DNA from: Octopus bimaculoides
Taxonomy: Eukaryota
Reading direction: 5' to 3'
Length of the DNA stretch: 64,000 bases
Assembly (NCBI RefSeq): GCF_001194135.2
Contig: NC_068985.1
Location: 35,897,153-35,961,152, forward strand
The position numbers and the translations under genes were made by a program. Below are positions 6,864 through 36,858 of this stretch, in pieces; positions within the stretch are counted from its first letter, which is position 1, and every line of letters begins with the position of its first letter. The notes beneath the pieces were generated by a model, which ran no database searches, was not told the origin of the DNA, and was given only the letters and a program-made list of their open reading frames with translations.

Positions 6864-7165
6864 TCAGCTGCTTACTTTGGTAGAATAACTTTGATTGCTT
6901 AGAGTGGCATTCCAAATCTTCACTTCCTCTCCTATTGGCCCTTCACGCCTTTTGTCTTGTGGTCGGTCAGTATGTGGGATTCCAAACATAGCTTCACCTA
7001 AGTTCTCACTCAGTTCAGCAAGAACAGAAGGTTCATTGTAATGGGTCACAGCTTGAGCCATTGCTCTGGCACGTTTCTCAGGTAAACTACTTTTAAAGAT
7101 ACCAGAGCCAACAAATACACCATCAACTCCAAGTTGCATCAACAAAGAAACATCAGCTGGAGTAG
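6864..7165 (-). CDS. PDX1: PDX1 exon 7 coding part ([26 protein letters not shown]...STKVSS*)
   Basis: tttgtttatttcag acceptor; tandem TGA TGA stops at 6866-6861; possible AATAAA near 6696-6701 on the - strand. Confidence 0.96.
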
Positions 7166-10100
7166 CTGAAATAAACAAAATGTATTTTTCACTGGATTAG
7201 TAAATATCACTAACAGTTGATATTACATGGAAGATAACATAAAAAGTTACAAAAAAATAAATATTAGCTGGAGTGATCTTATTCTTGAGTCACTTTGGTT
7301 AATTTTACTTCAACAGACCTCAAGTATAGATGTAGCCAAGTAAATACTTGACACCACCATAATTCAAACACTTTAGATATGCAAGATATACAATTCTAAT
7401 CTGAAGGTGCATGGCTCAATGGTTAGCTCACTGGGCTCACAATCATGAGGTAGCAAGCCTGATTCTCAGACTGGGCTGGGTGTTGTGTTCTTGAGCATGA
7501 CACTTTATTTCATGTTGCTCCAGTTCACTCAGCTGTAGAAATGAGTTGCAACATCACAGGTGCCAAGCTGTACTGGCCTTTGCTTTGCTTTGGATAACAT
7601 CGGTGGCATGGAAAGGGGAGGCTGGTATGCATGGACGACTGCTGGTCTTCCATAAAACAACCTTGTCTGGACTTGTGCCTTGGAGGGGAACTTTCTAGGT
7701 GTGATCCCATGGTCTTCATGACTAAAGGGGGTCTTTACTTTTACCTTTATCTTACAATCCTAATACAAATGTCCAAGCACTTATCATAATACCTTATATT
7801 GTAGGCATACTATAACTTGGTAATTGGGAAATATGTAGAATATGTGAAAAAGAGTAAGATGTTTTGTTTAGTGAGAATTGGCAGCTACATTTAACAAAAA
7901 AGGTGACTATATATAACAATACAGACATGTTCAATGTGAGTGTCCATGCCAAATATTTGAGAGGTAGATCCTATAATTAGAACTTATCATAAATCATAAC
8001 AATGAATAACATATAGAATTGTATGAAAACACTAGACTTACCAATGCCACCAGCAGCAAAATTTACCACTGGAAGTCGACCCATTTCAGCAGTTCTCCGC
8101 AACAGTTCTATTGGAACTTGTAGCTTTTTAGCATATTCATAAAGTTCTGTTGAGTCCATAGCTTGAGCAGTTCTAATTTCACGATTGATAGTACGAGCAT
8201 GTCTTACAGCTTCAGAGACATCACCTGCAAAGCACAAAGAAAAAAGAAAAGTTTTGGAAATAATATCTTAATAATATATACAACGTATTTTGGGTAGTGA
8301 GTTGCTAGAAATAGTTGACTGATGAACTTTGTAATATTTAGATGAGAGACAAAATATTGACACTAAGCAAAATCAGAACTTAGAGTAAAGTGTTCTGAAT
8401 TCAAATCTTGCTGGAGTTAAATAGTATTTGTCCATTTGACTTCTACATCCACTTTGTGTTTAGTGAAAATAAATCAGCACTTATAACTTACCTAAAACAT
8501 TTTTTCTGCCAACAGAAATATATTGATTTCTTCATCTTCCTGTTTATTTTAAAGAGCTTAATTGAAATCAACTTTTATATCTTAGTCAAGGGAGAAAAAG
8601 TATTGCTTATGACCTTATGCAGGACCTCTGAGAATAGTAAAGAAAGGGTGGATGTCTGGTCCAAATGCTTGCAAGAAAGATGGCGTTGCTAAATGAACCC
8701 AAGGGCCAGGTTGTGGTGTTAAATAGGACAAAATATTAGGACTACCACCCAACTAAATCTATATCCTTGTGGAATAATTTTTAGCTGTGATTTCAATAGT
8801 ATACAACAAATGAAAATTAATTCTTCTCCTACATAACATGCTAAAAGTATTGTAAGTCAGCTTCTCAAATTAACTGAGAAAAAAGAGTTCAGTACTTTGT
8901 TTGCAATATTTCTATCTGTTAATGTTATATACTAAAAGAAATTGTATTTTATGTATATGAAATATATATAATTATTAAAATAAGATATATATTTGCAAAT
9001 TGTAAGCCAGTTGATATTGTATTGGTTAACTAAAAAAAATATATTTAGTAATTATTTAAATTAGTTACATAGGAACAAATATATTCTGTAATTAGAATAA
9101 ATATATTTTTAAAATTAAAAATCAATCAAATACTTTTAGTCAGAGACAACCTGCAGCCTGTGTGACTTTCTGAATGACATGCCTGATGAAATTTTTATAG
9201 TAGTGTAGCTCGCTTCTTGAAAAAAAGTTGCCTGTGCCTAGTTTAAAAAGTAGTTCTATAATCTAAGTAGATGTAAAAAACACAAAATATAAGTGTATCA
9301 TCATCATCTTGTTCACCATTTTTGCAGTACAGCATTATATTCCAAGTATTGCTTAAATTAGAATTTTACATCCTGACACCCTTGCCATCATCAATTACAG
9401 AGTGGAGTGGGTGCAGGGTACCAATAAGGTTCTCTTACAAGAAATGGTCCTGTGTTTTGCACAAAACAATTACTATTCTGAAAAATGAACATATCTCGTA
9501 TATAGGAAAAACAATATAGTAGAAGTTATATAAAGAAGAAAATAGAGTATAATATCTGATGAGTTGTAGTGCACTTGAACATTGTATACAATAAACTTCC
9601 TCTTACTATCTTTGCTTCCCAGCCACATGGTTTCAAGTTTAGTTCTACTGCATGACACCTTGGGCAAGTGTCTTCTACAATAGCCAAGGGTTAACAAAAG
9701 CCTTGTGAGTAGATTTGGTAAATGGCAATCAGAAGAAGCCCGTTGTATCATCATCATCATCATCGTTTAATGTCCGCTTTCCATGCTAGCATGGGTTAGA
9801 CGATTTGACTGAGGACATTCAACCATAGAAAATCTGCCCCAATAAATTCCACCTGACCCATACAAGCATGGAAAAGTGGACATTAAATGATGATGATGAC
9901 AATATCCATCACTTGTTGGCAACAACATTACCAATTGCACAACAAAGCACTTGCCAAATTTTTATTTTCAAATAAGACACAATGAATTATTTTTGTGGTT
10001 ATATTTCCACAAGATAATTCACGAGCCACTTAATGCCAGCAAAAGAAGCAAGTGATAGATATGTAGCTTGGGTTTCATCAGTAGGCCTGTTGTTGCTTAT

Positions 10101-13100
10101 AATGTCAAATATTAACTTTAGTTTGTATTCAGTAAAAAAGAATTAATATATCAAAAACAAAGTCAAAAATGAAAATAATTAACCCACCTTTCCTTCTACT
10201 TCTTGAAATAAAAATAGATTAACTATTATTTGTTCTAGTGTTTTTGAGAAAATTATATGTCTTTTAATAAAAAGAATAAAAATAAAACAAAACAAATTGA
10301 TATATTAAAACTACTGTACCTGTTCCAGCTTCTCCTTTGGTTCTTATCATAGCAGCACCTTCAGAAATTCTACGCAAAGCTTCACCAAGGTCACGTGCTC
10401 CACAAACAACAGGAACTTTGAGTTTGTGTTTGTCAATATGGTTGTCAACATCAGCAGCTGTGAGGACTAGAACAGAAGGAAAGAGAATGAACAAAAATTA
10501 CTTATCTCAATGTTAAACATTCTATTTTGTATTTCAATCCACATCACACAAATCTGTTTCAAATAATATCTTGAAGAATAGCACTGTTACATATGCTTAG
10601 AAATAACAAAAATAAATAGATATATGCGTAGTGAATCTTGCAGGCATGAAATGGATTTGATCCACTATAGCCAAATTTAAATTAAGGTCATTGCCAGTGC
10701 CACTGAACTGGCTCCTGTGCAGGTGACACGTAAAAAATACCATTTGAGCATGGCTGTTGCCAGTACCGCCTGACTGGCCCTTGTGCTGGTGGCACGTAAA
10801 AGCACCCATTACACTCTCAGAGTGGTTGGCGTTGGGAAGGGCATCCAGCTGTAGAAACTCTGCCAGATCAGATTGGAGCCTGGTGCAGCCATCTGGTTCG
10901 CCAGTCCTCAGTCAAATCGTCCAACCCATGCTAGTATGGAAAGTGGACGTTAAATGATGATGATGACTTCAACAGAACTTTTCTCATGGTGGAACAATGG
11001 TTTTTTTCTGTGATAGCAGTTTTACATTTTTCAGATTGCCCTAGATAGGCCAAAATAATGTCTTCACCACTTGAGCTTTCTAACTTCTTTGATTTCACCA
11101 AAAGCTAGAATTAAGATAACAAGACCACCAACTATATCTTGTTCTCAATGATATGCCTATCCTTCTGAATAGTTATAAAAACAAGAACTCCCAAGCAAAA
11201 ATCAGTTAGTGACTCGAGGACAACTCAACTAGTTAGTCACTTGGTGACGACTCAACCAGTTAGTCACTTTGGTAACAGCTCTTGAGTTGAGTGAGAGCTA
11301 ACATCAGTTAGTGAACTGACCACTAGAATCATGGAAGCAGGCAGACAAACAGCCAGATCTAATTCTTTTCTCTTACAACATCATTCTATCTCTCTTGGTA
11401 ATTACTACTAAACAATGATGAGAACACAAACACAAACTATGCAAGGAAAATCTATATCTATCTTTATTTCGTTTGCTTTGCGATTTTATCACCTGTATAA
11501 TATAACAGTAAAAATAAATCTTTCATTGCTTACAAACAGATTACATCCATCCTGCTGTGTATCAACTATTGTTTTTCATATTATTGTGATACAAACTAAT
11601 CTTCAAGCGTTACATATGAATAAATGAATAAAACCTTCTGTATAACTCTATCACAATTGATAAACTTTGTCAACCGTCTTCTGGACCAAGTCAACATATT
11701 ATTAGTTCAAAGCTAAACTTTCTATGAGATTCAGTTATAATGCACACTAAAAAATTGTTTCACTATCCAAAATTGGGTCAGAAAAAGAGTTGGTATGTTA
11801 AGGGAAAACAGATAAATAAAAACTACCATTATCTATGAGAGTGTGCTACACTAGAAAACATTTTCAACTGTCAGTGAAGTTGATCTTAAGTATTCACAGT
11901 TAGAAAGTAGTAAGCAAGTGACTGAAGTTCATCATCAACATTTTCATGTCTCATTGCCAACTATTTGTCTGACCACCTCATCATTTTTCCCATTAAGTTA
12001 CTGCCTGCTGAAACAAATCGGTCTTATCAGGGGAGTTAATCAACAAGCATGCTGAGTACATGGTCCAAAGAGCAGAAATAGTGCAATATTTAATGAGGGT
12101 AAGGCGACAAGCTGGCAGAAATGTTAGCACACCGGGCGAAATGCTTAGCGGTATTTCATCTGCCTTTACGTTCTGAGTACAAATTCCGCCAAGGTCAACT
12201 TTGCCTTTCATCCTTTCGGGTCAATAAATTAAGTACCAGTTGCGTACTGGAGTCGATCTAATTGACTGCACCCCACTCCTCAAAAATGAGGTTGCAGCTG
12301 AGTTTTCTCATGTGCACTAAGTTCTACATGTAGTAGGGATTAATTACAGCTGCTCTCTTCTGCAGCATGCCAAAATTATTTCAGAACCATACAACAGTAA
12401 TGATTATAAACTACTCTCTGTTTGACTGACAGATTAACTTCAGATTGGCAAAAGTAGTATGATACATTCCAAAAGCAGTATAATATATTCCAAAATTTGC
12501 AGTTATTCCTTGTCTATGTTATTGCCTGAATTACTGAAATATATAGGTAGGACCATCAAAGTGTTCAAAATTAAAAACAGTTCTGTAGCAGTATTTTGTA
12601 CTTGGAGGATGTCACAAATTGAGCAACATATCTTACTTTACAAAGACATTAGTAACAGAAAAATACACTTATGTGGTATTGCTAAATAAACAATCGTAGC
12701 AGAGAGCTAAATAAACAATCTAAGAAGATTTGAAATTGTGATTGTTTAGTTGCTACTCATTCATGTTAACTGAAAACAATCTTCACAAAAAAGCTAATAC
12801 ATACAGAGTAGTTATGTCATTTGATGTGCAATACAAAAATAAATGATGATTGATAATGATGATAAAAAAATATTGATTTCTCTGACCTCTCTTTATAAGG
12901 GCAGAAAATGTGATTTGTACGATATTTGTTTTGCTCAAGAACAGAAACTGACGTAAAATCCAGTGAAGTGGTTACAACAACAAAGAAAGTTACAGATTTA
13001 AGATCACTGAAATGTTATCCCTAATAATGCTGTGTTGATTAAATTGTTAAAATACAATAAGAAATTAACTCTGCCAAAATATAACAAAACAAGAACCCCA

Positions 13101-15319
13101 AAACAGAGCATGTAAGAAAGACTTGATATTATTTGAAAATATTAGGGTTGCTTTAATCAGAGAAACAAAAAAATAAGTCATCAAATATAAAGACCAAAAC
13201 TCATAATTGTAATTAAAAACTTGTGTATTTACCTTCAGATTCATCGACCATGTCCACACCTAAAGCCTCTAAAATCTGGGCTTCAGCAAAATGACCGATA
13301 CGGGCTTTAGCCATGACTGGTATTGTAACAGCATTCATGATTTCTTTAATTTTCTTCAAAGGAAAATTTTCTTTATTTTAGTGCAAACCTCAATGATATT
13401 AATTGTGAATAAATCCCTAATATTTCTGTAATAACAATTAAATATGCTAACTTCTATGGGAAAAAAGGATAAATTTACATTTGCAAGAAACTTTGTAATG
13501 GCTACTTTATTTAGCATGAAAACATTGTCAGTTGATTACATATCAATACACCATTCATTACTAAAAGTTGGAATTATGCCAAATTATTCCTTCCAAGAAA
13601 TTAAGAAGGCCAAAATAAGCAAGAGAGAGACATTAAATTACTTACCAAGGGATCAGTCATTCTGGCAACACCTCCTTGGCGGCGAATATCAGCTGGAACT
13701 CTTTCAAGCGCCATAACAGCACAAGCCTATGAAATAAAATGGAAAAGTTATGTCATAAGAAATAGATAACGACTTTCCTGTGAAAGTCTCGCTTAGAACC
13801 ACATACATTTATGGATGATAATGCAAAAGTGAATTAGTTTGGTTTGAAGAAAATTACCCTTGAAGTTATAATCTGTTAGGTTATTTTTGAGCAGCAAGCT
13901 AAAGAGTAAGCTATTCCATATGCTTTACTAAAAAGCTCAAAATATATATTTCTGAATGACATTTCTTTATATTTCTGACAAATGCTTTCATACACGAATT
14001 AATAATTTTATCTGCAATTATTTTACTTACATTGCTAATACCTTTAGGAAAAGCAAAACTTCCATTTCATTCACTCACAAATTATTAAAAAAAATCTTGC
14101 ATTTGAAAAGGAGGATGCTAATTCTAGTTGCATTAGGATATAGCTGATTGAATTAACTTCCAAAATTGAAAGACAAGTTGATCCCAGTAGGTTTGATCTT
14201 GAGACAGTAAGGTGAGCTAATCTGTCCATTTCAACTAATTATGAATACATTATTAGTATTACTGTAAGAAAAGAGAAAGGATTACAGATAATTCAATTTT
14301 AACCCAAGAACATGAGACTTGGTGCTAATGAATAATTAGTCTGATGTCATACTTTTGTGCATTCAAATGCAGTTAAAATCAATGATACTTTTCATCTCTT
14401 GTAGGTTACTGTTTAATCTTTACTCTTTTACTTGTTTCAGTCATTTGACTGCGGCCATGCTGGAGCATCGCCTTTTAGTCAAGTAAATCGACCCTAGGAC
14501 TTATTCTTTGGAAGCCTAGTACTTATTCTATCGATCTCTTTTGCTGAACCGCTAAGTTACGGGGACGTAAACACNNNNNNNNNNNNNNNNNNNNNNNNNN
14601 NNNNNNNNNNNNNNNNNNNNNNNNNNNNNNNNNNNNNNNNNNNNNNNNNNNNNNNNNNNNNNNNNNNNNNNNNNNNNNNNNNNNNNNNNNNNNNNNNNNN
14701 NNNNNNNNNNNNNNNNNNNNNNNNNNNNNNNNNNNNNNNNNNNNNNNNNNNNNNNNNNNNNNNATATATATATATATATATATACGACGGGCTTCTTTCA
14801 GTTTCTGTCTACCAAATCCACTCACAAGGCTTTGGTCGACCCGAGGCTATAGTAGAAGACACTTGCCCAAGGTGCCACGCAGTGGGAATCAACCCGGAAC
14901 CATGTGGTTGGTAAGCAAGCTACTTACCGCACAGCCACTTCAAATTATTGTCTTGCTCTTACATTATAACAGATCTTAGGCAATATAAAGAATTCATTAT
15001 TGTCAACAATAAAACAATTAAAAAAAGACAGACTTACTCCAGCTTCTTCTGCAATACATGCTTCATCTGCATTGGTAACATCCATAATGATTCCTCCTTT
15101 AGCCATTTGTGCCATACCAGCTTTGACCTTGAAGGTTCCTAGTAAAAAATAATAAAAAACATATATTTTACTAATGTTATAAGGAGAATGACTTGAATCT
15201 AGTAAAAATAATATGTAAGCCTATAAATTAAATGAAATAGGTAACATAAGAAAGCATTATGTTAAAGATTAAATGTATCATATTCAATTCTAACATCAAC
15301 AAAAGAATACAAATTTATG

Positions 15320-15394
<75 letters not shown>

Positions 15395-18300
15395 AAAAAC
15401 AGAAAAGTTAAAGTCAACCACAGTAACATTTCAACATAAAACAGAGGAAAAACTAAATACTGCAAAGCATTTAGACCATCATCTTAACATTTCTGCCAGT
15501 CTACTGACTCTACATTAATATTTAATATTATCAGGCTTTTAAATGAAACTTTCTGACTTTTATTTCAGTGAAAATATTTTCCCAAGGAAAACTTTCACAA
15601 ACTATGGCATCAGGTAAAAAAATACATTTGGGTTAACTATAACAGCACTTGAGCATCATAGCAGGCACTTTGTGTATTCATTCACTAATATAGCAATAAT
15701 TCTTGCTGGTTCAGTTCAGGTACCCTAAGTATATAGAGATTATCGTTATAAACAGTGAGCGCATTGTACAGTTATTTTCATACCCTTGAGATCTGAATGA
15801 GGTTTCTGTACTTATATATAATTTTTATTCTGTATTGTGAAGATTGGTCAATACAGCAGTTTGGATTTACTGTTTACACAATCTGCTCTCATATTGTATT
15901 TTAAGATGGCTAGTAGAAGAAAAAAATTATAAATTACTGTTTTAATATAACCAACATTTTTTCCTTTAGCATTATTACATTATATTACAGAGAATAATTT
16001 ATAATTTAATTTCTTTTTTGATTGATACAAGCTAAAATATGTTAGTGTGTTATGTTGAAAATGTTAGCAAATTGCAACTAGCTATAATATGAATTGGTAA
16101 CTGTAACCCTAAATTCAGAAGCTAAGCAATTTTAATTTTTCAACAACTTAGCCTTGTAAAAAGAATTAGAATATCACAACTGTTGTAGCTGTGAACAGGC
16201 TGTGTCAAAAAGTCAACAGTTTTGTGAAGTCATACTTTATAAGATAATTAAAGTGTAAAACACACCAGTTTTCCTTCCTGCAGTTTCATCCTTCACAGCT
16301 GTTAAATTGGTAACAACAACATCAGGATCTATAAGCAAAAAATGAATATTAATAATAATCTTAGTAATAATGGTGACAATGATTTATAACACAGGATAAG
16401 GTTACAAATTGGTGGAGAAAGTTCACAGACTAAACTGACCCCAGAAGACTGATATTTATGGCATTTCTTAAAAAAAGAATTCTTTATGAAGTGAATGTTT
16501 GAAATTTAAAATGATTTCTTTCTTTTTTTAAATTTTCAGACAATCATAATGAAAGGCAATGTTAACTAGATGGAGGAATTAGTTTAGAATAATGAGGTTT
16601 TACAAAGCCACAGATGACAAAGTAATATTGCAGTGGGGATATAAGTTGATATATTTGACCCTAAGTACTTACTAGTTGTCATTTTCTTGATGCCAGAAAT
16701 TTAGAAAGCAATGTTGGTGGAATTTGTGAGAAGGAAAGCTAAACACCTAAGATACATAGGGAAGAAGAAAATAGAAGTTGGGGTACTGTTGCTTTGATGA
16801 TTGTGATTGATTTACAAATCAGAACTGAGTAATAGAATCATTTCGCTTGAAATCAAACCTTCGTTCTTAATATTGTCCCTATCAACTCACACTAATCACC
16901 CTTCAGTGTTACCAAATCATCTTTCCTTCTCCACCACCATACATCTCTCACTCACCCCAAGCACTACATCTACCTCCCTTCTCACACTCTTGCAACCTAC
17001 CCACCAACAGATCATCTCTCTTTCTCTCATCCTTCCCTTGACCACTGTATCACTGACCACTGCCTTCCCGCAACTATACATCATTGATCACCCCTCCACC
17101 CTTATACGCCATCTACTACATCCACCCTTCAATCCTACCCAAATTTTATAGTCATCACCTTCCCTATCTTCTTGCCAATGTATATTTCCCATCCCTCAAC
17201 ACTTATTCATCATTCATTATATTTTCCTCCTCACCTATTCCCCACACTCTCCATACGAGTTTGCAACCTTTCCAGTTCCACTCTCTCTTCTATAATGTGA
17301 ATAGTATTCCTCTACTGGGATGTCTGTTTTGTTCTAGTCTCTTCTTTCATACTTTAACCTCTCATTGCCTAACATGAAATCACCTCCCTCTTGTCTGTAG
17401 TCCCACTCAGTCAAAGGGATCTCAGCTTTGCAAGCTGCATAGCAACCTCACTAGTGCTAGTGCCATGAAAAAATCAATCGATAGACACAGTAAAGTGGTT
17501 GGTATTAGGAAGGGCATCTAAACACAGAAACCATACCAAAGCAGACATTGGATACAATACAATTCTTAGACCCACTGGATCTTGTCAAACTGTTCAACCC
17601 ATGCCAGAATAGAAAATGGACATTGAAGGGTGATGATGATTTCTAATACTGAAGCCTCAAATTTTGGGAAAAGTTATAGATAATTAAATTCACACAAGGT
17701 AATTGATTGGTACTTATTTAATATGAATATCCACCTGCCCCCTCAGAAGAATGAAAGGCAAAGTCAACCATGGTAAGATTTGAACTCAAACCATAAAGTA
17801 CTGTAAGCTGATGTCATAAAGCTTTTTTTGTCTGATATGCAAATAATTCTACAAACCACTACCCTAGAGGAGCAGTTAATAACAATAGTTAATATTCACA
17901 ACCTAACATGACCATCAAACTAAACAATGCCTTTATTGTTGATTTAATTGATAAAAATACATAAAATCATATATGAACTTGTTTTTTTTTTAAGTCTGTG
18001 ATAAACCAAAGAATTACATCAATGACTTATAAAAATAGAAATGGAGAGCTAATTGAAAACCCATCTGATCTCAATTTAAACAGTGGAGGAGGAGTCGGAG
18101 GTGGGGAGGAGGAGTCGGAGGTGGGGAGGAGGAGTCGGAGGTGGGAAGGAGGAGGAACAATATAGATTTAGTACAGGAGTGGGTGTTGGTATTTTGATAT
18201 TAGTTTATGACTAAAAAACTATCTCCCCATTCAACAACAGATGATAGAACCGCTTATGTCAGTCAGCCCCAGCTGTCAAATACTAAAACAAAAAAATGTT

Positions 18301-21300: not shown

Positions 21301-24300
21301 ACAAACTGTTGTCCTTAAATGCTCATAGTTTGTGCAACAAGATACATCTTTTTGATTCTTACATTAAAGGTATCAACCCCAATTTCATTACAGTCACGGA
21401 AATATGGGCACATTCCTTACTCTGTGATGGGGTTTTCAGTATAGCTGACAACAACCTGTATCGCAAAGACCACATTAATTGTTGTAGAGGTGGTGAGATG
21501 GTCTACATTCGTTCAAACTTTTCAACAATTCCTTGCATTGACTTGAACCAATCACAAGAAGTATTTTTCTGCGATATATATATGACCATGTTAACGCTTC
21601 TACATGGAGTTGTTTACCCATCCCCCCAAACTACCATCAGGACATACAACTTTGTGATATCTTCAGAACCGCCACCAGGAAAACAGCCACTTATTGTTTT
21701 TATTGCAGGCAACTTCAATCACGCTGAGATTGATTGGGAAACCTTTTGTTGGCTGCAAAACGCAAATGATTTCCTTGAGCTAGTGCTGGACTCAAACTGG
21801 TTCCAAGTAGTCAGCTCCCCAACAAGAGGTGACAAAACTTTGGATCTACTCTTTACCACTACTCCTGAAACGGTTATTAGTGTTACTACTGAGGAACCTT
21901 TAAGCGACTCTGATCATGCTATGATCATTGCCAATTTGTCCCTTATGGGCAGTAACAAAAACCACAGCCATTTCCAAACTGCTCGCTTAGACTGGAATAA
22001 AGCAGACTGGAACTCTTACTGCACCAAGCTAAAATGCCCAAACTAGCTGGAATTTTACAACTCTAGAGATGTGAATACCATACTTCAGAATATCCTGAAC
22101 TCAAGATGGACAGTATGTGCAACATCAGTACCACGTAAGCACAAAAAACATCCGAAAAGTGCAATTTGGAAGACTGCAGCAGTCAGACTTGTCAGGAAAG
22201 ACTGTCGTATGCTGAACTGGAATACAAACTGCATAAATTAGATATAAATAGGAAAAGTGCAATAAATCATCCAACCATCTCAAGCAGGTGACAGAAAGGG
22301 GAGTGCTTGAATTTGAACAGTGCATAGCAACCAACACTGATAGTAAAGTGTTCTAGAAATATGTACATTCAATGTAGAGACCTCACTCTCCAGTTGGTCT
22401 TCTTCGCAATCCCCACACAGGCCAGATTACTGACGGTCTCAGGGAATGCACAGAACCTGGGGGGTGGGGAGGCGGTGTGCCCTGGGCAGAACTTTTAAAG
22501 AGGCAGCACTTTTCATCTTGTTGTAGGCTATTGCTGTCAGCAATATGTATTTTTTGTGGAGTCTGGGGGTGGTACACACCCTAGCTATGCTAGTGCACAG
22601 AACTCATTGCTGAATGCTATGCAGGCATTTTCACTGTTGAAAATCAAAATGTACCACCTCCACCACCTCTGACATCAAATTCTATAACAACTATGGAATT
22701 TACACCTGCAATGCTGCAACATCACTTTAAGAATAAGTGCAACTATGCCTCTCCTGGTCTTGATGGTACCTGCTTCTCAAAAGTGGTGGGTACTTTCTTC
22801 TGCACCAACTTTCACTCTTCTTTCAATTCTGTCTTAACAACAGTGCTACTCCGGAACAGTGGAAAACTGCCAGTGTCATTCCTCTGTTCAAAAAGGGTGA
22901 CCACAAGTTGTCTGTCAACTATTGTCCAGTCAGTCTTACTAGCTGCATTGCCAAACTGATGTGTCAGAGAAACTGTGTCAGAGAAACACTCTGGATCTTC
23001 TGGAATTCTCACAGCCTTATCCAGCCCTCACAATTTGGATTTATCCCTTACTCCAGCTGCTGTGATCAACTTACTGTTTCTTGAAGATATCACCTGGATC
23101 ACTGATGGTGGCTCATGGGTGGATGCTGATTACCTTGACTTTGCTAAAGCTTTTAATTCTGTGTCACACAAAAGACTTATGGCAAAACTCTCTGCAATGG
23201 GTGTGAAAGATGATCTTCACAACTGGTTGTAGTCTTCCATTCTCAGCTGAAAAAATGTAGTCACTGTTCTAGGATAGCATTCTTCACCCTATGAGATATC
23301 ATCTGGTGTGCCGCAAGGATCTGTTCTTGGTCCCCTTTCATTTATTGCATACATTAATGATATAGATGCCAATTTAATGAATGCCACAGTGCTGAAATAT
23401 GACATCATGCTGTGCCTTGAGATAAAAAGGACAGATCTTGAATACTATAGATCTTTCCTGTAATTGGACCTGGACACACTGCAGCAATGGATCATGGACT
23501 GGCAACTCAAGCTGGCTGTGGACAATTGTACCACCATGCATTTTGGGAGGAAAACCCCAGCGTCCACATACTCTCTCCACAACACTAATATCAAGAAGTC
23601 TTCTTGTGAATGTGACCTGGGCATTACTGTCAGCAGTGATTTGTGCATCTCTAAAATTGTCAAGAAGGTCAAGGGTGTCTTGACATCACTCAGCAAGACT
23701 TTTGTCAGCCACTCTCCATTTAAGGCTACATATGGCTATGGTGTGGCCACAGTTGGAATTTGCATCACCAGTCTGGAACCCCTATCTTGCTCAGAACACT
23801 GACCTCCTGGAAACTGTTCAGAGATGTGCAACCAAGCAAATCCTCTCCATCAGGCATCTACCATACTCTGAACGCCTTGCTTCTCTGGGCATGGATACGT
23901 TGACGCTCCGATGTCTGGCAACTGACTTGGTAAACACCCATAAAATTTATTAACCATCATGTTAATAGCAACTTTGAGCACCTTTTTGAATTCCATGCAT
24001 CTGACACGCATGGGCATGCCTACAAAATCAGAAAACAGCAAAGCTCTCATGACTTTCAGAAACATTATTTTACACTTAGAGTTGCTGAAGCATGGAACAA
24101 ACTACCTGCATCAATTGTTAGCTGCCGAGACATTGCATCCTTTAAAACTGCCATGCTTCCTGAAATTCACCAACACTACACCTGATATCCCCCACTCTAT
24201 ATGCGTGCACACATATATATAATGACTCATATACTGTTCACTTTCCTGACATTTGTACATAATTCCATGTACTACACATGCACCTTTGGTAAGCTGTAGT

Positions 24301-27300: not shown

Positions 27301-30300
27301 ACATTGACATTGTAGGGTGTGACATGTTCAATACTGTGTATGCTCTCCCTGGGTGTTCAAAATGGCCATACACCGTTCGTACACGGAGTGCATGAGGTGG
27401 TTCACAAAAGCCAGTGGCACCTGTGCCCACACCCTGAGGAAAGCTGCCTCCAGTTCCACATGAGTTGTTGGCCTTGGGACCACCTGGTTCAGTCAGCACT
27501 GGATTTCATCCCACTGGAGTTCAATTGGGTTCAAATCTTGGTTGAGAGCTGGCCACGGCATGGTTCTGATGTTGTGCTGATGCAGGAAGTCCATAGTGAC
27601 CCTGGCCATGTGGGAGGGAGCATTGTCCTGCTGGAACACATGGCTATGGTAACGTGTGAAGAAGGGCACGATGTGAGGTCTTAGGATCTGGTCAACATAG
27701 TGCTGTGCTGTGATACCACTCCCTCTGCCTGCACCAACATTTTGGAACACATGGGGCCCAATTCTCTGATTCAGGTATATAGCACCCCAAACCATGGTGC
27801 TTTGGACACCCCATGCATCTCTCTCTGTGACACATGCATCTTTGTAGCATTCACCCCTCCTAGGTCACACCCTCACTCTGCCATCTGAGGTAGAAATGCA
27901 CTACTGGCTCTTGTCAGAGAAGACTATTGACCTCCATTGTTGGTACTGTGTAGCCCACTGTAGTCATGCGTGATGGTGGTGGGCAGTAAGGACAGGCCCT
28001 TGAGCATGATGATAGCAATGCAGGTTGTTGGCGGACAGTTGACGTTATACCATGTTGTGACTGATGGGTCACTGTTCAGTGCCAATGATCTCATGAGCTG
28101 TCACACTGGCCAGTTCAAAGTGATCACAGAGGTGTTGCAGGTGGATGAAACAGTCCTGCCTGGGCATGGTCACCCAGGGGCGCCCTCTGCGGGCATGGTC
28201 TGCAGTACTGTTGGTCTTGTTGTATCACTGCTGCAGGCAATAGATGGTGCTGACATGGACATTATAAGCTTTTGCAACAACCAGAGTATGCTGTCCTGCT
28301 TGCAATTGGCCAATAGCATGTTCTCTCTATGCTGCTGACAATCAGGTTGTGCATGATGCATCCAAATTACAAATGCCAGGAACATGGTTCAAGTTGATTT
28401 ATACCCATAACCTCCATGAGATGCATGTGCGTTTTGGTTTTTATGACAATTGTTTGCAACTGCCACCCACTGCATTCAATGCAGCTGTGTTTTGGCGTCT
28501 CATTTCAGGGAAAGTTGAAAGGTTACCTACAATTTGGGTCTCAGCCATAAACAGCAAGTCTTGGAATATTTACACTTATATCCTTGAAATAAATTTTCAG
28601 AATTTACCATATAAAAATGACATGAAAAAATTGTGTTTCTTTTGTGGTTCAGTGTATATTTAGAAAATACATAAACTCTAAGCACAATTTAGAAGTCATA
28701 CAACAAAATCAAAACCTTAAGGCGACTCTTGAAATGATTATTATGTAGTTAAATAAAAATAATCTTAACTGTTCCAGGGTCATGGGAACTCTGCCAGTCT
28801 ACCTTCTCACCACTTGTCACATCCTCTTCAAGTAACTCATAACCTCATATTACCTCTTACCTCAATCACCTACCTCTCTAAAAGAATGAAACAGAAAGTA
28901 GAAGAACTGTTTTCTGCTATATTATAGCCTAACAAGTAATGTTAGGCAGTGATACAGTATTGGTGTTCAGCAAAGAAACTTCTACATATTGTATGACCTG
29001 CTGGAAACAGCAGTCATATCTTCTTCAAAATACAAATACACCTCCATCTTAAGTAAGGGATGTATTGGACAATGTAATTCCTGATATATAAAATATTAAA
29101 AAAAGCGATGTTTACAACTGGAATGCCTTTCATTATAGATTTGGTTCATCAGAACTGATATGGGACTAAGCAATTAACCAAGTCAATGAAGAAAGATTTC
29201 TGTGTGGTCACTTGAGCAACTAAAATAGCAGCCAAATTTCCTTATTCAGGCTCACAACATATGAATACAGTGCAATATAATTTCTTTTTCTCAACAGGCC
29301 CTGCACTAATTAACCCTGTGCTAATTAGCATTATTCCAAAAGAAATCAAAAAAGAAAAAAAAATCCCATCACCTTCAAATAATACCTGGACCTTGAACAC
29401 ATCTCAGCCAACAACAACTCCCTACTTGAATAGAACATGATACTACAAAATTTGATTTAAAAATAACTTAACTGATCCTATCAGGTGGTGCTATTAAGTT
29501 AGATATGGCTTGGGCCAATGTTTGGCTGAAACATGTCTAAGTTTATCAAGTTTAAGTCACCACATTCAAAATTTTTAAACGACACATTAAAAAACGTACT
29601 CCATTATATTACAAAAATACAAGACACATAATACATGATAGAAAACAGACACATGATGGAAAATTGTTCCAGCATACTCTTGCCTGACTCATGCAAGTAT
29701 GGAAAAGTACATGTTAAAATAATGATGCATGCATGCATACATACATACATTACATTACATAAACTCTGTGCAGTGGTACTCTCAGTGCTTATAACAGAAA
29801 ATAACATTAAACTTTAGCACCTGAGTATTCCACTTTAGAATGAAAAAATGTTTTCTTTAGCAATCAAGTCTCAGTTACTACTCATTTGTTCAAGAATATA
29901 ACATCAAAAAGAAGATGGATGTTAGCACGAGGTTGAAAGTTAAGTTTATTTAAGGAAAAGTACTGGAGGTTAAAAACACAATTCTAATGTTATTAAGACA
30001 GTGGCATTACATTTGACTGCAAAGTGGAATAGTTGCTCTCAAAATACCAGCTTCAACAATTCATACAGATAATCAAAGATATAAAAGTAGTCTATCCAAT
30101 TTAGTATGTAAAATCAAATGTAAATAAAGTAAAAGAAAATTTCTACAGAAAGACCATAAGATTGGATTATGAAGAAAAGTTAGCAAATTTATTCATCAAT
30201 TTAATTTTTGATATCATCAAAAGAACAGGAGAAACAAAGTTTTAAATATGAACTACAGGCTGGCTAGCTATTTTGCAGAAATGAGAATTCAACAGAGCAA

Positions 30301-33290: not shown

Positions 33291-33370
<80 letters not shown>

Positions 33371-33419
33371 NNNNNNNNNNNNNNNNNNNNNNNNNNNNNN
33401 NNNNNNNNNNNNNNNNNNN

Positions 33420-33483
<64 letters not shown>

Positions 33484-34028
33484 GTGTGTATGGGAACTTT
33501 GCAAAAAAAGAAAAAAAATTAGATGCTGAAAGAATATCGCAGAGAGCAAATAGCTTGCATGTACATTAGCTCTACGCTATATGATACGGGTGGCTAGTAA
33601 ATAAGCTGACGTGAACGAAAGGGTTAAAAATATTACCACAGTAAGATGAAAAAAATATAAATCCTTTAAGCAAAGGAAGAGAAATCTAGTGATTGAAGGA
33701 AACACGATCCAACGAAATCTTCACGCTGTCGTTCAACCTGCTAGAAATAACAGTCTGAACTCCCTCAAATCACACGCAACAGTCTTTAAAGGGACTTGTT
33801 GGATAACATGGAACTTAAGAAAAAGACGTGACTCAAGAAAAAAAATTAGATAGTCACGGTTGGAATGTTTTTGATTATAGGCCTGCTCGATTAGAAGTGA
33901 CATGAGGATAAACAATCCTGGACCAACAAAGCAGCATATTTGCTCACTCTGCTAGAAATACCAGCCAATTAACCCTCAAACCACACTCTAGTCTCATTAA
34001 AATAGGATAAAGTGGTCTTGAACGCTCT

Positions 34029-34063
<35 letters not shown>

Positions 34064-36174
34064 GAGAAAGAAAGAGGGAAAGAGAGAAAGAAAGAAAGAA
34101 AGGTTATCTTGGTTGGAATGCTATTGCTCAGAACTGATCTAAGGCAGAACAACTAACTAATGAAGGAGGCTCGACCTACAAGAAACTGCGATCNNNNNNN
34201 NNNNNNNNNNNNNNNNNNNNNNNNNNNNNNNNNNNNNNNNNNNNNNNNNNNNNNNNNNNNNNNNNNNNNNNNNNNNNNNNNNNNNNNNNNNNNNNNNNNN
34301 NNNNNNNNNNNNNNNNNNNNNNNNNNNNNNNNNNNNNNNNNNNNNNNNNNNNNNNNNNNNNNNNNNNNNNNNNNNNNNNNNNNNNNNNNNNNNNNNNNNN
34401 NNNNNNNNNNNNNNNNNNNNNNNNNNNNNNNNNNNNNNNNNNNNNNNNNNNNNNNNNNNNNNNNNNNNNNNNNNNNNNNNNNNNNNNNNNNNNNNNNNNN
34501 NNNNNNNNNNNNNNNNNNNNNNNNNNNNNNNNNNNNNNNNNNNNNNNNNNNNNNNNNNNNNNNNNNNNNNNNNNNNNNNNNNNNNNNNNNNNNNNNNNNN
34601 NNNNNNNNNNNNNNNNNNNNNNNNNNNNNNNNNNNNNNNNNNNNNNNNNNNNNNNNNNNNNNNNNNNNNNNNNNNNNNNNNNNNNNNNNNNNNNNNNNNN
34701 NNNNNNNNNNNNNNNNNNNNNNNNNNTATATATATATATATATTACAATAAAATATAACTGGTGACGAATATCTTTCTTATAATTGCGTGTAAAATTAGC
34801 TCCAGTTGAAGTAAACGTTCAGCTCGGAGATTAACTGATTTAGATTATTGATGATTTCAGAGGAATTCGAAGGCGGGGAGAATCCAAATTTAATGATTAC
34901 CAAAGCTACATCCCCTGAAGGAGAAACCACCCATTAGCAATGCAAATCGATACGTGATTGATATAATAGTTTGGGCAAGTATTAGTCATCACATTCATTA
35001 AAAAAAAAAAAGAAGAGCTGAATTGGATGCTATTATCTAATTCATTCACAAGCAAAAACATTGTTCATGACCATTGAAGTTAGGGTTACATAAGCGTTAA
35101 TGTACAATTCTTATTCCAGCTCGAGGCACCGGCTCTTAATACCAATCACTTGAAAGATAACGAGGAAATTCCACGTAGTTAGTCAACCAACTAGAAATAG
35201 CAGCCAAATTTCCCTTAAATCCCATCCCATCGCCTTAAGAAATATCTCAAATTGATATTGTAGTATTGGAATACATAGTCTCTATAAAACAAAAAAAGTG
35301 AGGCGATTATGGATGGATAGATGCATTGATCACAGTTCTATTTAATCGATGCTGAAATAGACAAAACAAGTTACGAAGATACACATGATAGATGGGCTGT
35401 TCACCTCTGTATATCTTTTAGAAAACATCACGCTTTAGCATGTTAAACATATACATATTTATTTATACACACTCATATAGTAAGTGAACATTGTTTATAA
35501 CAAACGGGAAGAGTACTCAATGCGAGACAGAGTATAATTATATTTGTCAGCTGTCTAATGTCTCTACATGAAATTTCAACATACCTCGATCGGTTCAGTT
35601 ATCGCTGATCTATGTTATGTTATTGTTTTGCTCTATGCTAACCCTGGTGGAGCAGATCAATGATCAAAGCGTTCCAGCCATGAACATCTCATCTAATTTT
35701 CAGACAATGCATCAAGAATATAATCAAAATTGTCTCCCTACTACTTTTAAGATGGTAGGGTATGATTTAAGGAATTTGGATGCGTTTTGCAACAAAATAG
35801 ATGTTTTTTGTTGGATCGACGTTGATATGTGTGTGTGTGCGCGCGTGTGTACTCGCATAGTGGAATATCAGGCATAAAGATGTGCACTTATGTGGGAATC
35901 AAGTTCAATGTCGGACCTTATTGGTTACTATGTCCCTTTATTCTTACATTACATCTATCATGAATATAGTGTGAATAAACGGCGATATGACATCGAAAAT
36001 ATTTACAGTTGTTAATACTAAAAGCAAGAAGATAAATCGCCTTCTCTAAGCCTCTTATATAGTAAACTAGAAGGGCACGGCATTTTCAGCACAAATAAGA
36101 GGCACAGAAAAATTGGTAGCTATTTTACATCACTTACCGGTGATGATACCAGTAGCAATCGTTTGTCCACTCAT
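6864..36174 (-). CDS. PDX1: Pyridoxal 5'-phosphate synthase, synthase subunit (PDX1/SNZ/PdxS family; not the homeobox PDX1). 7 coding exons, 972 nt, 323 aa
   Basis: Hand-spliced join on - strand: 36174-36138, 15138-15038, 13726-13646, 13353-13233, 10466-10320, 8224-8042, 7165-6864. All six introns are GT-AG with consistent phases (1,0,0,1,1,1) and no internal stop. Signature motifs: [96 protein letters not shown]. Confidence 0.97.
7410..7735 (+). mobile_element. tRNA-derived SINE (another family) in PDX1 intron 6
   Basis: GCATGGCTCAATGGTTAG... tRNA-like head followed by ...GTGTTCTTGAGCATGACACTTTATT... Confidence 0.6.
8042..8224 (-). CDS. PDX1: PDX1 exon 6 (GDVSEAVRH...[11 protein letters not shown])
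   Basis: tctttgtgctttgcag acceptor, ATTG|gtaagt donor, 183 nt. Confidence 0.96.
10320..10466 (-). CDS. PDX1: PDX1 exon 5 ([13 protein letters not shown]...[20 protein letters not shown])
   Basis: tccttctgttctag acceptor, ACAG|gtacag donor; contains the second catalytic Lys in IRTKGE. Confidence 0.96.
10690..10965 (-). mobile_element. RTE-3'UTR-derived short repeat with (CAT/GAT)n end, family D
   Basis: GTGGTTGGCGTTGGGAAGGGCATCCAGCTGTAGAAACTCTGCC...GTTAAATGATGATG. Other copies at ~37065-37215, 45900-46320, 56940-57120, 61075-61430, 62005-62190 and 63170-63320. Confidence 0.8.
12105..12285 (+). mobile_element. SINE family A copy in PDX1 intron 4
   Basis: GCTGGCAGAAATGTTAGCACACCGGGCGAAATGCTTAGCGG...GAGTACAAATTCC...CTTTCATCCTTTCGGG. 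Confidence 0.85.
13233..13353 (-). CDS. PDX1: PDX1 exon 4 ([40 protein letters not shown])
   Basis: ttttcctttgaag acceptor, GAAG|gtaaat donor; contains the catalytic Lys in MAKARIG. Confidence 0.95.
13646..13726 (-). CDS. PDX1: PDX1 exon 3 ([27 protein letters not shown])
   Basis: tttatttcatag acceptor, TTG|gtaagt donor, 81 nt in frame. Confidence 0.96.
14420..14940 (-). mobile_element. tRNA-derived SINE, family B (CORE-like ACCTTGGGCAAGTG block, internal TA/TG microsatellite), interrupted by an N gap
   Basis: Homologous copies at ~9600-9745(+), 48630-49030(-) and 59810-60120(+). Confidence 0.85.
15038..15138 (-). CDS. PDX1: PDX1 exon 2 ([34 protein letters not shown])
   Basis: tttttactag acceptor, GGA|gtaagt donor; contains the catalytic Asp motif MDV. 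Confidence 0.96.
18085..18155 (+). repeat. G-rich 21-bp tandem repeat, ~3 copies
   Basis: GGAGGAGGAGTCGGAGGTGGG x3. Confidence 0.9.
20150..20530 (+). mobile_element. mariner transposase 5' fragment, truncated by a LINE
   Basis: [24 protein letters not shown]...[21 protein letters not shown]...KVCA matches the mariner HTH region; contains stops. Confidence 0.7.
20540..24335 (+). mobile_element. Near full-length, degenerate CR1/L2-group LINE (ORF1 remnant, APE endonuclease, RT) inside PDX1 intron 1
   Basis: Endonuclease motifs [40 protein letters not shown] (ORF 21309-22046). RT motifs [16 protein letters not shown] and [11 protein letters not shown] (~23130-23340). C-terminal [11 protein letters not shown]...LLETVQR. 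Ends in an ATT-like tail. Many frameshifts. Confidence 0.9.
24338..24905. mobile_element. Three adjacent SINE family A copies in alternating orientation (+,-,+)
   Basis: Copies at ~24338-24512, ~24527-24697 and ~24716-24905, joined by (ATT)n spacers directly after the LINE tail. Confidence 0.85.
25460..26366 (-). mobile_element. Internally deleted mariner element
   Basis: TA|CGAGGTGATATCAAAAGGTTGCCAGACTA at 25458, with a related inverted end near 26345-26366. The - strand reads [28 protein letters not shown] (mariner YSPDLAPxD motif). Confidence 0.85.
27134..28654 (-). mobile_element. Full-length but frameshifted Tc1 (DD34E) transposon
   Basis: TIRs CACTGAA..AAAAGAAACAC at both ends, flanked by TA TSDs (27132-33 and 28655-56). 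Transposase pieces: HAIGQLQAG...RRGRPWVT and FQQDNAPSH...[13 protein letters not shown], with 34 residues between D and E. Confidence 0.92.
30270..31050 (+). mobile_element. Highly degenerate non-LTR retrotransposon RT remnant
   Basis: ...[28 protein letters not shown] resembles the post-YADD RT segment (LQxML...GLxINxxK). It is GC-richer than the flanks, and no clean catalytic motif survives. Confidence 0.35.
31196..31664. mobile_element. Old hAT (Charlie-like) MITE
   Basis: Imperfect TIRs CACTGGTTCTCAAC / GTTAAGAACCACTA; 8-bp flanks CTCCAGAT / CTTCAGAC match at 6 of 8 positions. Confidence 0.5.
33290..33480. repeat. (TG)n(GA)n microsatellite spanning an N gap; other arrays at 15319-15390 (GA), 36790-36927 (TA/TG), 6589-6630 (polyA) and 61706-61770 (ATT)
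   Basis: Read directly; these arrays explain the low-complexity ORFs in the track. Confidence 0.95.
34194..34726. other. Assembly gap (others: 14575-14763, 33371-33419, 36928-37053, 51463-51874, 52555-52653)
   Basis: Runs of N. Confidence 0.99.
36138..36174 (-). CDS. PDX1: PDX1 exon 1 coding part ([13 protein letters not shown])
   Basis: ATG at 36174-36172, 37 nt, then CCG|GTAAGT donor. The phase-1 end joins exon 2 (GA ACC TTC) to give ...[12 protein letters not shown] CpG-richer promoter-like stretch lies just upstream (~36180-36420). No homologue alignment fixes this short exon, so it is the least certain of the seven. Confidence 0.8.
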
Positions 36175-36785
36175 ACCAGGAATTTAAGGTAGTTGCGATA
36201 AAACGTAGAGGCAGCTGATAAACAGGATCGCTCTTGCTTCGTGAGCTTCGCCGGGATTGAACGAATCTGGTTAAGAGAGACACCTATTAAAGCAAGACCG
36301 ACAGTCAGACAAGCTGCGTGTATACGTAGAGTCACGCACGCACATGATACGTACGTCGGATTACACTTACGCATACACGCACACAGATACAGACACGTGT
36401 GCATGTTCAAGATCGAGAAGGTAGGAGAGAAAGAAATAGAAGCAGTATATATTTGGCAATATTGAACGTGATGACAAATGAGAGAGAACGGGAACAATAG
36501 TAATAGGGAGTGAGAGAGAGAGAGGAAAAGAGAAATAGAGAGACGGTTACGAAGTAGAGGAAATAGTAAGAGAAAGAAATGATGCGAGGAGAAAAGATCA
36601 ATAGATTAAAATCTGACAAAACAGGGAGAAAGCTACAGCGATAGAAAAGAGAATAAAAACTAAGTATGAAAATAGGGGTATTATATAATAAATACGACAG
36701 AAATGCGAAACTGCTGTTATGAATAAACTCCTTCCTACGCTACCACACTTTGTCTCTATCTATCTATCTATGTGTATATATGTGC

Positions 36786-36858
<73 letters not shown>

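What the first reader, a model, noticed from the sequence alone, without database searches (positions are those of the whole stretch)
6864..36174. Intact, fully spliced PLP-synthase (PDX1/SNZ) gene: possible de novo vitamin B6 synthesis in an animal
Seen: seven GT-AG exons join into a 323-aa ORF. Its residues map at a constant +8 offset onto B. subtilis PdxS as recalled: D32 (D24), K89 (K81), K157 (K149), H123 (H115), R145/R146 (R137/R138), plus the GTG, GGI and GSG phosphate loops. The introns hold host-type SINEs/LINEs, and the neighbours CEP44 and NOSIP are animal genes, so bacterial or fungal contamination is very unlikely. Established: the DXP-independent PDX1/PDX2 pathway is found in plants, fungi, archaea, apicomplexans and many bacteria. 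Animals are usually treated as B6 auxotrophs; known exceptions include the sponge Suberites SNZ gene and horizontally acquired SNZ/SNO in cyst nematodes. Inference: this probable cephalopod may make its own B6. The catalytic Asp/Lys pattern argues against a PDX1.2-like pseudoenzyme. Automated 'SNZERR-like' annotations may already exist in some invertebrates, so novelty is more likely functional than the bare presence of the gene.
Basis: partly seen in the sequence, partly recalled or inferred. Interest (0 to 1): 0.92.

Follow-up and report, generated by a model that had tools for sequence, protein, structure and literature searches.

The report
Octopus PLP synthase (PDX1/SNZ) gene
This is the octopus's own, intact and expressed copy of the enzyme subunit that makes vitamin B6 from scratch; it is an old animal gene already in public annotation, so it is ordinary as a gene, although nobody has shown by experiment that an octopus makes its own B6.

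Summary
The finding is real but not new. The window is Octopus bimaculoides chromosome CM046605.1. On its minus strand lies the gene RefSeq already calls "pyridoxal 5'-phosphate synthase subunit SNZERR" (XP_052824270.1, 344 aa).

However, the model lacks a 63-nt coding exon (16266-16328). All 42 RNA-seq junction reads and both transcript contigs include that exon, so the real product has 8 exons and 344 aa, not 323. All three assembly gaps lie in introns.

- **Family:** the protein passes the PdxS equivalog cut-offs and keeps every catalytic and phosphate-loop residue checked. Its model folds like solved PDX1 structures.
- **Selection:** dN/dS is about 0.03-0.08.
- **Origin:** six intron positions and phases match the limpet and sponge orthologues, and the sequence nests within molluscs. 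It is a vertically inherited animal gene, not contamination or a recent transfer.
- **Partner:** intact PDX2 glutaminase exists in an octopod (Argonauta) and a cuttlefish. It is not in this window, and I could not show it for O. bimaculoides.

De novo B6 synthesis is therefore likely but untested. Precedents are sponge SNZ/SNO (2001) and a 2021 genome-based inference for a vent snail.

The parts
36138..36388 (-). Exon 1: 5' UTR (about 36175-36388) plus the first 37 coding nt (ATG at 36174; [12 protein letters not shown] + 1 nt), donor GTAAGT
   Evidence: RNA depth is confined to 36138-~36388. Contigs continue from 36138 into the exon at 16328. Exact spliced mapping.
16266..16328 (-).
   Evidence: tblastn with the orthologue, sequence, joint 15138|16266 in reads and contigs, 42/42 junction reads, exact mapping.
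15038..15138 (-). Exon 3 (101 nt): [21 protein letters not shown]..., carries D53 (= Bs D24)
13646..13726 (-). Exon 4 (81 nt): [27 protein letters not shown]
13233..13353 (-). Exon 5 (121 nt): carries K110 (= Bs K81, the R5P Schiff-base lysine) and E134
10320..10466 (-). Exon 6 (147 nt): carries H144, R166/R167, R176, K178 (= Bs K149) and the GTG loop
8042..8224 (-). Exon 7 (183 nt): carries K216 and the GG(I) phosphate loop
6702..7165 (-). Exon 8: last 302 coding nt (GSG loop, C-terminal tail with KIWNATL, stop TGA at 6866-6864) plus 3' UTR to at least 6702
   Evidence: The transcript contig extends to 6702.
14575..14763 (.). Assembly gap inside intron 3; does not touch coding sequence
   Evidence: Joint 13726|15038 is supported by reads and contigs.
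33371..34726 (.). Two assembly gaps (33371-33419 and 34194-34726) inside the 19.8-kb intron 1
   Evidence: Exon 1 is joined to exon 2 in transcript contigs.

Best explanation
The locus is the nuclear, vertically inherited PDX1 (SNZ/PdxS) gene of Octopus bimaculoides. It has 8 coding exons spread over about 29.7 kb (window 36388 to 6702, minus strand) and encodes a 344-aa synthase subunit of the DXP-independent PLP synthase.

Shown here:
- The gene is intact and is spliced as in RefSeq isoform X1.
- It is transcribed in many RNA data sets.
- It is under strong purifying selection.
- It has the PDX1 (beta/alpha)8 fold and every catalytic and phosphate-binding residue examined.

Inferred from established PDX1 chemistry:
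- Ribose 5-phosphate forms a Schiff base with K110 (Bs K81) in the P1 site.
- Ammonia supplied by a PDX2 glutaminase is incorporated.
- The intermediate is passed to K178 (Bs K149) in the P2 site, where glyceraldehyde 3-phosphate is added and PLP is completed.
- The octopus is therefore probably able to make vitamin B6 de novo, as are most molluscs, cnidarians, annelids and sponges that keep the PDX1/PDX2 pair.

The partner PDX2 is not linked to PDX1 in cephalopods. It was found intact in Argonauta and Acanthosepion and is inferred, not shown, for O. bimaculoides.
For: - **Family:** Pfam SOR_SNZ scores 351 bits (cut-off 27). NCBIfam PdxS equivalogs score 470 and 458 bits (cut-offs 395 and 438).
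- **Solved relatives:** Arabidopsis PDX1.3 scores 418 bits against 309 for the pseudoenzyme PDX1.2.
- **Residues:** Bs D24, K81, E105, H115, R137, R138, R147, K149, G153, G214, G235 and S236 are all conserved and invariant in 39 animal sequences. The roles of K81 and K149 are taken from PMC3024981.
- **Fold:** the AlphaFold model matches solved PDX1 structures with target TM-scores of 0.89-0.93.
- **Transcripts:** every junction is supported by raw reads and contigs. The gene is present in 18 transcript assemblies from six studies.
- **Selection:** dN/dS is 0.025-0.046 against two decapods and 0.084 between the decapods, where dS is 0.70.
- **Vertical descent:** six intron positions and phases, and five exon lengths (101, 81, 121, 147, 183 nt), are identical in octopus, Lottia and the sponge Dysidea. 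In an NJ tree the cephalopods form a clade inside molluscs and inside animals.
- **Genomic context:** a 127-Mb chromosome, with CEP44 and NOSIP as neighbours and transposon fragments in the introns.
- **Partner:** PDX2 with intact GTCAG and FHPEL motifs is found in Argonauta hians (an octopod) and Acanthosepion pharaonis.
Against: - No enzymatic or labelling evidence exists for any cephalopod.
- PDX2 was not found in the window.
- No Octopus-named PDX2 appeared among the 120 listed hits of a search that does contain the Octopus proteomes. That search also missed the Argonauta PDX2, so it is a weak negative.
- dS between octopus and decapods is saturated, so those ratios are only rough.
- The NJ tree has no support values.
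- The structure model is only moderately confident overall (mean pLDDT 73).
Confidence: 0.8

Rival explanations
1. The gene is conserved and expressed but works in Octopus without a glutaminase partner. In this reading PDX2 was lost in Octopus, and PDX1 either uses free ammonia, which is plentiful in ammonotelic cephalopods, or serves a non-biosynthetic 'SNZ' stress role.
For: PDX2 is absent from the window although it sits head-to-head with PDX1 in sponge and limpet. No Octopus-named PDX2 was among the top hits. From general knowledge, PDX1 can use ammonium salts in vitro.
Against: Argonauta, an octopod, has an intact PDX2, and so does a cuttlefish. demonstrably missed the Argonauta protein, so the Octopus negative carries little weight. 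The N-terminal PDX2-docking region ([16 protein letters not shown]) is invariant from cephalopods to cnidarians.
Confidence: 0.1
2. It is a catalytically dead PDX1.2-like pseudoenzyme or a decaying gene.
For: None specific. This rival was raised only because plant PDX1.2 shows that such paralogues exist.
Against: All catalytic and phosphate-loop residues are kept. The protein scores 418 bits to PDX1.3 against 309 to PDX1.2. It passes the PdxS equivalog cut-offs. dN/dS is 0.03-0.08. The reading frame is intact.
Confidence: 0.03
3. The gene is bacterial or fungal contamination, or a recent horizontal acquisition like SNZ/SNO in cyst nematodes.
For: Reviews state that animals cannot make B6, so a foreign origin is the naive expectation.
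Against: Seven spliceosomal introns are present, and six share position and phase with limpet and sponge. The closest relatives are other cephalopods, then molluscs, then other animals. The gene is embedded between CEP44 and NOSIP on a 127-Mb chromosome, with host transposons in its introns. Spliced host transcripts exist.
Confidence: 0.01
4. The reader's 7-exon, 323-aa exon-skipped mRNA is the main or a significant product.
For: Skipping the 63-nt exon keeps the frame.
Against: None of 42 junction reads, and neither of the two transcript contigs, shows the skip. RefSeq isoforms are 344 aa and 303 aa, not 323. The exon and its V-T/S-N-L motif are conserved across molluscs and cnidarians.
Confidence: 0.02

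Closest known systems
RefSeq XP_052824270.1 / UniProt A0A0L8GKJ0, 'pyridoxal 5'-phosphate synthase subunit SNZERR isoform X1 [Octopus bimaculoides]'
   Same: It is the same gene. The 344-aa protein maps exactly, residue for residue, onto eight exons of the window.
   Different: Nothing differs.
Arabidopsis PDX1.3, B. subtilis/Geobacillus PdxS and yeast Snz1 (solved PLP synthase subunits)
   Same: About 68% identity to PDX1.3 and 61% to PdxS over the whole barrel. The fold, the two lysines, D24 and the phosphate loops are the same.
   Different: The animal protein has an N-terminal extension of about 29 aa with a conserved V-T/S-N-L motif. Molluscs also have a C-terminal tail of about 30 aa with a conserved KIW(N/D)ATL motif. 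Both are predicted disordered and their function is unknown. No biochemical data exist.
Suberites domuncula SNZ/SNO (Seack et al. 2001), the accepted animal exception
   Same: It is an orthologous animal gene. A sponge orthologue (Dysidea) shares six intron positions with the octopus gene. Reviews cite 'some sponges' as having the pathway.
   Different: In sponge, and in the limpet Lottia, SNZ and SNO sit head-to-head. In cephalopods the pair is separated.
Horizontally acquired SNZ/SNO of cyst nematodes (Heterodera/Globodera)
   Same: Both are PDX1-family genes in an animal genome.
   Different: The octopus gene is vertically inherited, as shown by its shared metazoan introns and its nesting within molluscs. 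It is not a bacterial-type acquisition.
Genome-based inference that a mollusc host makes B6 (Lan et al. 2021, Gigantopelta aegis hologenome, PMC7895826)
   Same: [quoted passage not shown] The Gigantopelta PDX1 and PDX2 are among the homologues found here.
   Different: It is a pathway-presence call only. It has no gene-level or enzymatic analysis, and the main text does not mention cephalopods.

Membership tests
PdxS/PDX1/SNZ, PLP synthase lyase subunit (Pfam PF01680; NCBIfam NF003215, TIGR00343) | Full-length match above the curated family cut-offs | tested here: met
   PF01680 scores 351 bits (cut-off 27). NF003215 scores 470.5 (cut-off 395). TIGR00343 scores 458.5 (cut-off 438.45).
PdxS/PDX1/SNZ, PLP synthase lyase subunit | (beta/alpha)8 barrel of the PDX1 type | tested here: met
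   The AlphaFold2 model has 8 strands alternating with helices and a mean pLDDT of 73. The blocks from residue 191 to 300 are mostly above 90, while the first half of the barrel is less confident, with blocks as low as 51-69. Foldseek top hits are all PDX1/PdxS/Snz1, with target TM-scores of 0.89-0.93.
PdxS/PDX1/SNZ, PLP synthase lyase subunit | Catalytic lysines of the P1 and P2 sites (Bs K81, K149) and Asp (Bs D24) | tested here: met
   K110, K178 and D53 align to them and are invariant in 39 animal sequences. Their roles are taken from PMC3024981.
PdxS/PDX1/SNZ, PLP synthase lyase subunit | Phosphate-binding loops (GTG, GG, GSG) and P2-site residues H115, R137, R138, R147 | tested here: met
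   G182-T183-G184, G242-G243, G264-S265-G266, H144, R166, R167 and R176 are all present.
PdxS/PDX1/SNZ, PLP synthase lyase subunit | A PDX2/PdxT/SNO glutaminase partner encoded by the same organism | tested here: inconclusive
   It is not in the 64-kb window. Intact PDX2 is found in the octopod Argonauta hians and the cuttlefish A. pharaonis. No tool here could search the rest of the O. bimaculoides genome.
PdxS/PDX1/SNZ, PLP synthase lyase subunit | PLP formation from R5P + G3P + NH3/Gln; dodecameric assembly | not testable with these tools
   This needs recombinant protein, an assay or complementation.
PDX1.2-type non-catalytic pseudoenzyme | Loss of the catalytic Lys/Asp and phosphate-loop residues | tested here: not met
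   All are retained. The score to PDX1.2 is 109 bits lower than to PDX1.3.
Horizontally acquired animal SNZ (cyst-nematode type) | Non-metazoan nearest relatives and no ancestral metazoan gene structure | tested here: not met
   The nearest relatives are cephalopods, then molluscs, then cnidarians, annelids and sponges. Six intron positions and phases are shared with Lottia and Dysidea.

The most novel reading that the evidence does not exclude
Octopuses, and with them most molluscs, cnidarians, annelids, brachiopods and sponges, are true vitamin-B6 prototrophs through an ancestral PDX1/PDX2 PLP synthase. The textbook statement 'animals cannot synthesise B6' would then describe lineage-specific losses (vertebrates, insects, nematodes) rather than an animal trait.

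In addition, the animal enzyme carries lineage-specific conserved tails of unknown regulatory function: an N-terminal V-T/S-N-L mini-exon and a molluscan C-terminal KIW(N/D)ATL motif. The ancient bidirectional SNZ-SNO gene pair was broken apart in cephalopods.
Probability: 0.65. Interest if true: 0.45.

Novelty: already known. Interest (0 to 1): 0.25.

Why it matters
As a sequence feature it adds nothing new. The gene is in RefSeq and UniProt for this species and for dozens of other invertebrates.

Its value is as a reminder that the common statement "animals cannot make vitamin B6" (still made in recent reviews) is an over-generalisation. The evidence that the gene is ancestral, intact, expressed and constrained in a cephalopod is strong, yet no bilaterian PLP synthase has, to my knowledge, been assayed.

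This matters for three reasons:
- It bears on cephalopod nutrition and aquaculture diets.
- It bears on host-symbiont vitamin budgets in marine invertebrates.
- PDX1/PDX2 is promoted as a 'host-free' drug target in parasites, and that assumption does not hold for invertebrate hosts.

Tried and rejected
I used loose-end consensus at 36138 and 15138 instead.

2. I looked for PDX2 in the window with recalled B. subtilis PdxT, recalled Arabidopsis PDX2 and the Lottia SNO protein. Nothing turned up.

3. A search with a patched sponge SNO query found sponges, a tunicate and bacteria, but no molluscs.

4. A search with Lottia SNO found many molluscs and a cuttlefish but no octopod. I first read this as possible loss in octopods. 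I rejected that reading when the exhaustive HMMER search found the Argonauta PDX2. The word index had simply missed it.

5. P0273, an unnamed PDX2 from transcriptome assemblies, was considered as a possible octopus PDX2. It is only about 50% identical to the cuttlefish protein and no closer to it than to bivalves, so its taxon stays unknown.

7. Literature searches for SNZERR returned 0 papers. Searches for PDX1/PDX2 in metazoa, cnidarians and molluscs found no gene-level study of a molluscan or cephalopod PLP synthase.

8. The cuttlefish PDX1 locus (L004) came without DNA, so I could not compare its introns.
Full report
**Observation**

The gene lies on the minus strand. A tblastn probe with a recalled PdxS sequence located six core exons.

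The best database hit was [quoted passage not shown], 344 aa.

Those residues are encoded in the window by a 63-nt exon at 16328-16266 with ag|..|gt borders and phase 1 on both sides. An exact spliced mapping shows that the 344-aa protein is reproduced, residue for residue, by eight window exons.

The window is therefore O. bimaculoides assembly GCA_001194135.2, chromosome CM046605.1, at about 35.89-35.94 Mb.

**Gaps and transcripts**

All three flagged assembly gaps lie in introns. Gap 14575-14763 is in intron 3, and gaps 33371-33419 and 34194-34726 are in intron 1.

Raw RNA-seq reads and assembled transcript contigs support six joints:
- 7165|8042
- 8224|10320
- 10466|13233
- 13353|13646
- 13726|15038
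- 15138|16266

Exon 1 is transcribed from about 36388. At 36138 the contigs continue with the reverse complement of ATCCTGATGTTG..., which is the start of the missed exon.

All 42 reads that leave 15138 in three raw runs go to the missed exon, with agreement 1.0. RefSeq lists isoforms of 344 and 303 aa, the latter starting at M42.

**What it is**

The protein passes Pfam SOR_SNZ (351 bits) and both NCBIfam PdxS equivalog models above their cut-offs.

Its best solved relatives are Arabidopsis PDX1.3 (418 bits) and Thermus, Geobacillus, Bacillus and yeast PLP synthases. The plant pseudoenzyme PDX1.2 scores 109 bits lower.

Mapping to B. subtilis numbering shows D24, K81, E105, H115, R137, R138, R147, K149, G153, G214, G235 and S236 all conserved. 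I anchored that numbering with the published K149 peptide TKGEPGTGNIVEAVR. The same residues are invariant in 39 animal orthologues.

An AlphaFold2 model has a (beta/alpha)8 barrel, most confident in its second half. It matches solved PDX1 structures at target TM-scores of 0.89-0.93. The N-terminal 37 and C-terminal 32 residues are predicted disordered.

**Whose gene it is**

The gene has seven introns. Six of them coincide in position and phase with the introns of the limpet Lottia gigantea and the sponge Dysidea avara orthologues. The five internal exon lengths (101, 81, 121, 147, 183 nt) are identical in all three.

A quick NJ tree, without support values, puts octopods and decapods in one clade inside molluscs and inside an animal group. 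That group is separate from Arabidopsis and B. subtilis.

The neighbours are CEP44 (an intronless 448-aa ORF, 2585-3931, + strand) and a NOSIP-like first exon at 60560-60682. Intron 1 holds a LINE endonuclease fragment and a DDE transposase fragment.

Contamination and recent horizontal transfer are excluded.

**Constraint**

Nei-Gojobori dN/dS is 0.025-0.046 between octopus and two decapod cephalopod transcripts, although dS is saturated in those pairs. It is 0.084 between the two decapods, where dS is 0.70. O. sinensis/vulgaris differs from O. bimaculoides at only a few residues, and Argonauta is about 91% identical.

**The partner**

PDX1 needs ammonia from the PDX2/SNO/PdxT glutaminase. 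In Dysidea and in Lottia an SNO gene lies head-to-head with SNZ. Adjacent locus tags suggest the same arrangement in Patella and Mactra.

No SNO is present in the octopus window, which reaches 28 kb upstream of exon 1.

A word-indexed search with Lottia SNO found PDX2 in many gastropods, bivalves, a chiton, Lingula and the cuttlefish Acanthosepion pharaonis, but no octopod. An exhaustive HMMER search with the cuttlefish protein then found [quoted passage not shown]. It is 68% identical and keeps the catalytic GTCAG and FHPEL motifs. Octopods therefore have PDX2, and the earlier negative was a search artefact.

In both cuttlefish and Argonauta, PDX1 and PDX2 lie on different contigs. The ancient bidirectional pair has been broken in cephalopods.

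I could not search the rest of the O. bimaculoides genome, so its own PDX2 is inferred rather than shown.

**Mechanism**

The mechanism is inferred from the established chemistry of the family (and the structures listed):
1. R5P binds as a Schiff base to K110 in the P1 site.
2. PDX2-derived ammonia is incorporated, giving the chromophoric intermediate.
3. The intermediate is relayed to K178 in the P2 site.
4. G3P is added and PLP is completed there.

Everything the sequence can show is consistent with this. Activity itself is untested.

**Novelty**

The gene is already annotated for this species (XP_052824270.1, UniProt A0A0L8GKJ0). It is also annotated for O. sinensis, O. vulgaris, Argonauta, a cuttlefish and dozens of other invertebrates.

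Reviews still say animals cannot make B6 and allow only "some sponges" as an exception. A 2021 hologenome paper already scores B6 as host-synthesised in a vent snail, compared across 19 molluscs.

I found no gene-level or biochemical study of a molluscan PLP synthase.

**Verdict**

Interest is modest and rests on the untested physiology.

Noticed in passing
The motif is conserved in the N-terminal extension of PDX1 from molluscs and cnidarians (VSNLSL, VKNLSL). It is absent from bacterial and plant enzymes, is predicted disordered, and has no known function.
   Followed up: partly
window 6864-6960 (-), residues about 315-344: There is a mollusc-specific C-terminal tail with a strongly conserved K-I-W-(N/D)-A-T-L-G motif. 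It is present in cephalopods, a chiton, gastropods and bivalves, and absent in cnidarians and sponges. The model shows a short predicted helix (324-329) in an otherwise disordered tail. The PDX1 C-terminus is known to affect catalysis, so this could be regulatory.
   Followed up: partly
L002 8482-9326, L003 6895-7959; window 36400-64000: SNZ and SNO sit head-to-head in the sponge Dysidea and the limpet Lottia, as they do in yeast. In cephalopods the pair is separated. There is no SNO within 28 kb upstream in the octopus, and PDX1 and PDX2 lie on different contigs in the cuttlefish and in Argonauta.
   Followed up: partly
L002 8300-9500 and 19503-24728: The Dysidea avara SNO next to SNZ copy 1 has an in-frame TAA, and Tyr replaces the catalytic Cys (GTYAG). 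It may be a pseudogene. A second SNZ copy of 314 aa lies about 5 kb away on the opposite strand.
   Followed up: no
window 2585-3931 (+): CEP44 is encoded here as a single uninterrupted 448-aa ORF (Pfam CEP44, 89 bits), convergent with PDX1. An intronless CEP44 could be a retrogene or a lineage peculiarity.
   Followed up: no
window 9506-9839, 10508-11175, 12178-12511, 14182-15517: Intronic repeats have RNA-seq depth hundreds of times that of the PDX1 exons. A>G and T>C are the commonest differences from the genome (27 and 21 places, against 16 G>A and 12 C>T in run X20). These could be paralogous repeat copies or ADAR editing, which is extensive in octopus. None of the 40 listed sites is in a PDX1 exon.
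   Followed up: no
window 21309-22043 (+), 27496-27795 (-): A LINE-type endonuclease/reverse-transcriptase fragment (PF14529) and a DDE_3 transposase fragment (PF13358) lie inside the 19.8-kb intron 1.
   Followed up: yes
window 36719-37250: An assembly gap (36928-37054) flanked by TA/CA-rich microsatellite lies only about 540 bp upstream of the PDX1 transcription start. The promoter region is therefore incompletely assembled.
   Followed up: no
P0364: RefSeq isoform X2 (303 aa) starts at M42 (MAQMAKGG...). It would lack the N-terminal segment that in bacterial PdxS docks PdxT. I did not look for its alternative 5' exon in the window or the reads.
   Followed up: no
Method note. The word-indexed protein search returned 8000 candidates but missed the Argonauta PDX2, which the exhaustive HMMER search ranked first. 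Absence from the indexed search is weak evidence for fast-evolving proteins.
   Followed up: yes
L005 742-1437 (P0273): This is an intact PDX2 from four transcriptome assemblies of unknown organism. It is about 50-55% identical to all molluscan classes compared and groups with none. It may come from an unsampled molluscan lineage.
   Followed up: partly
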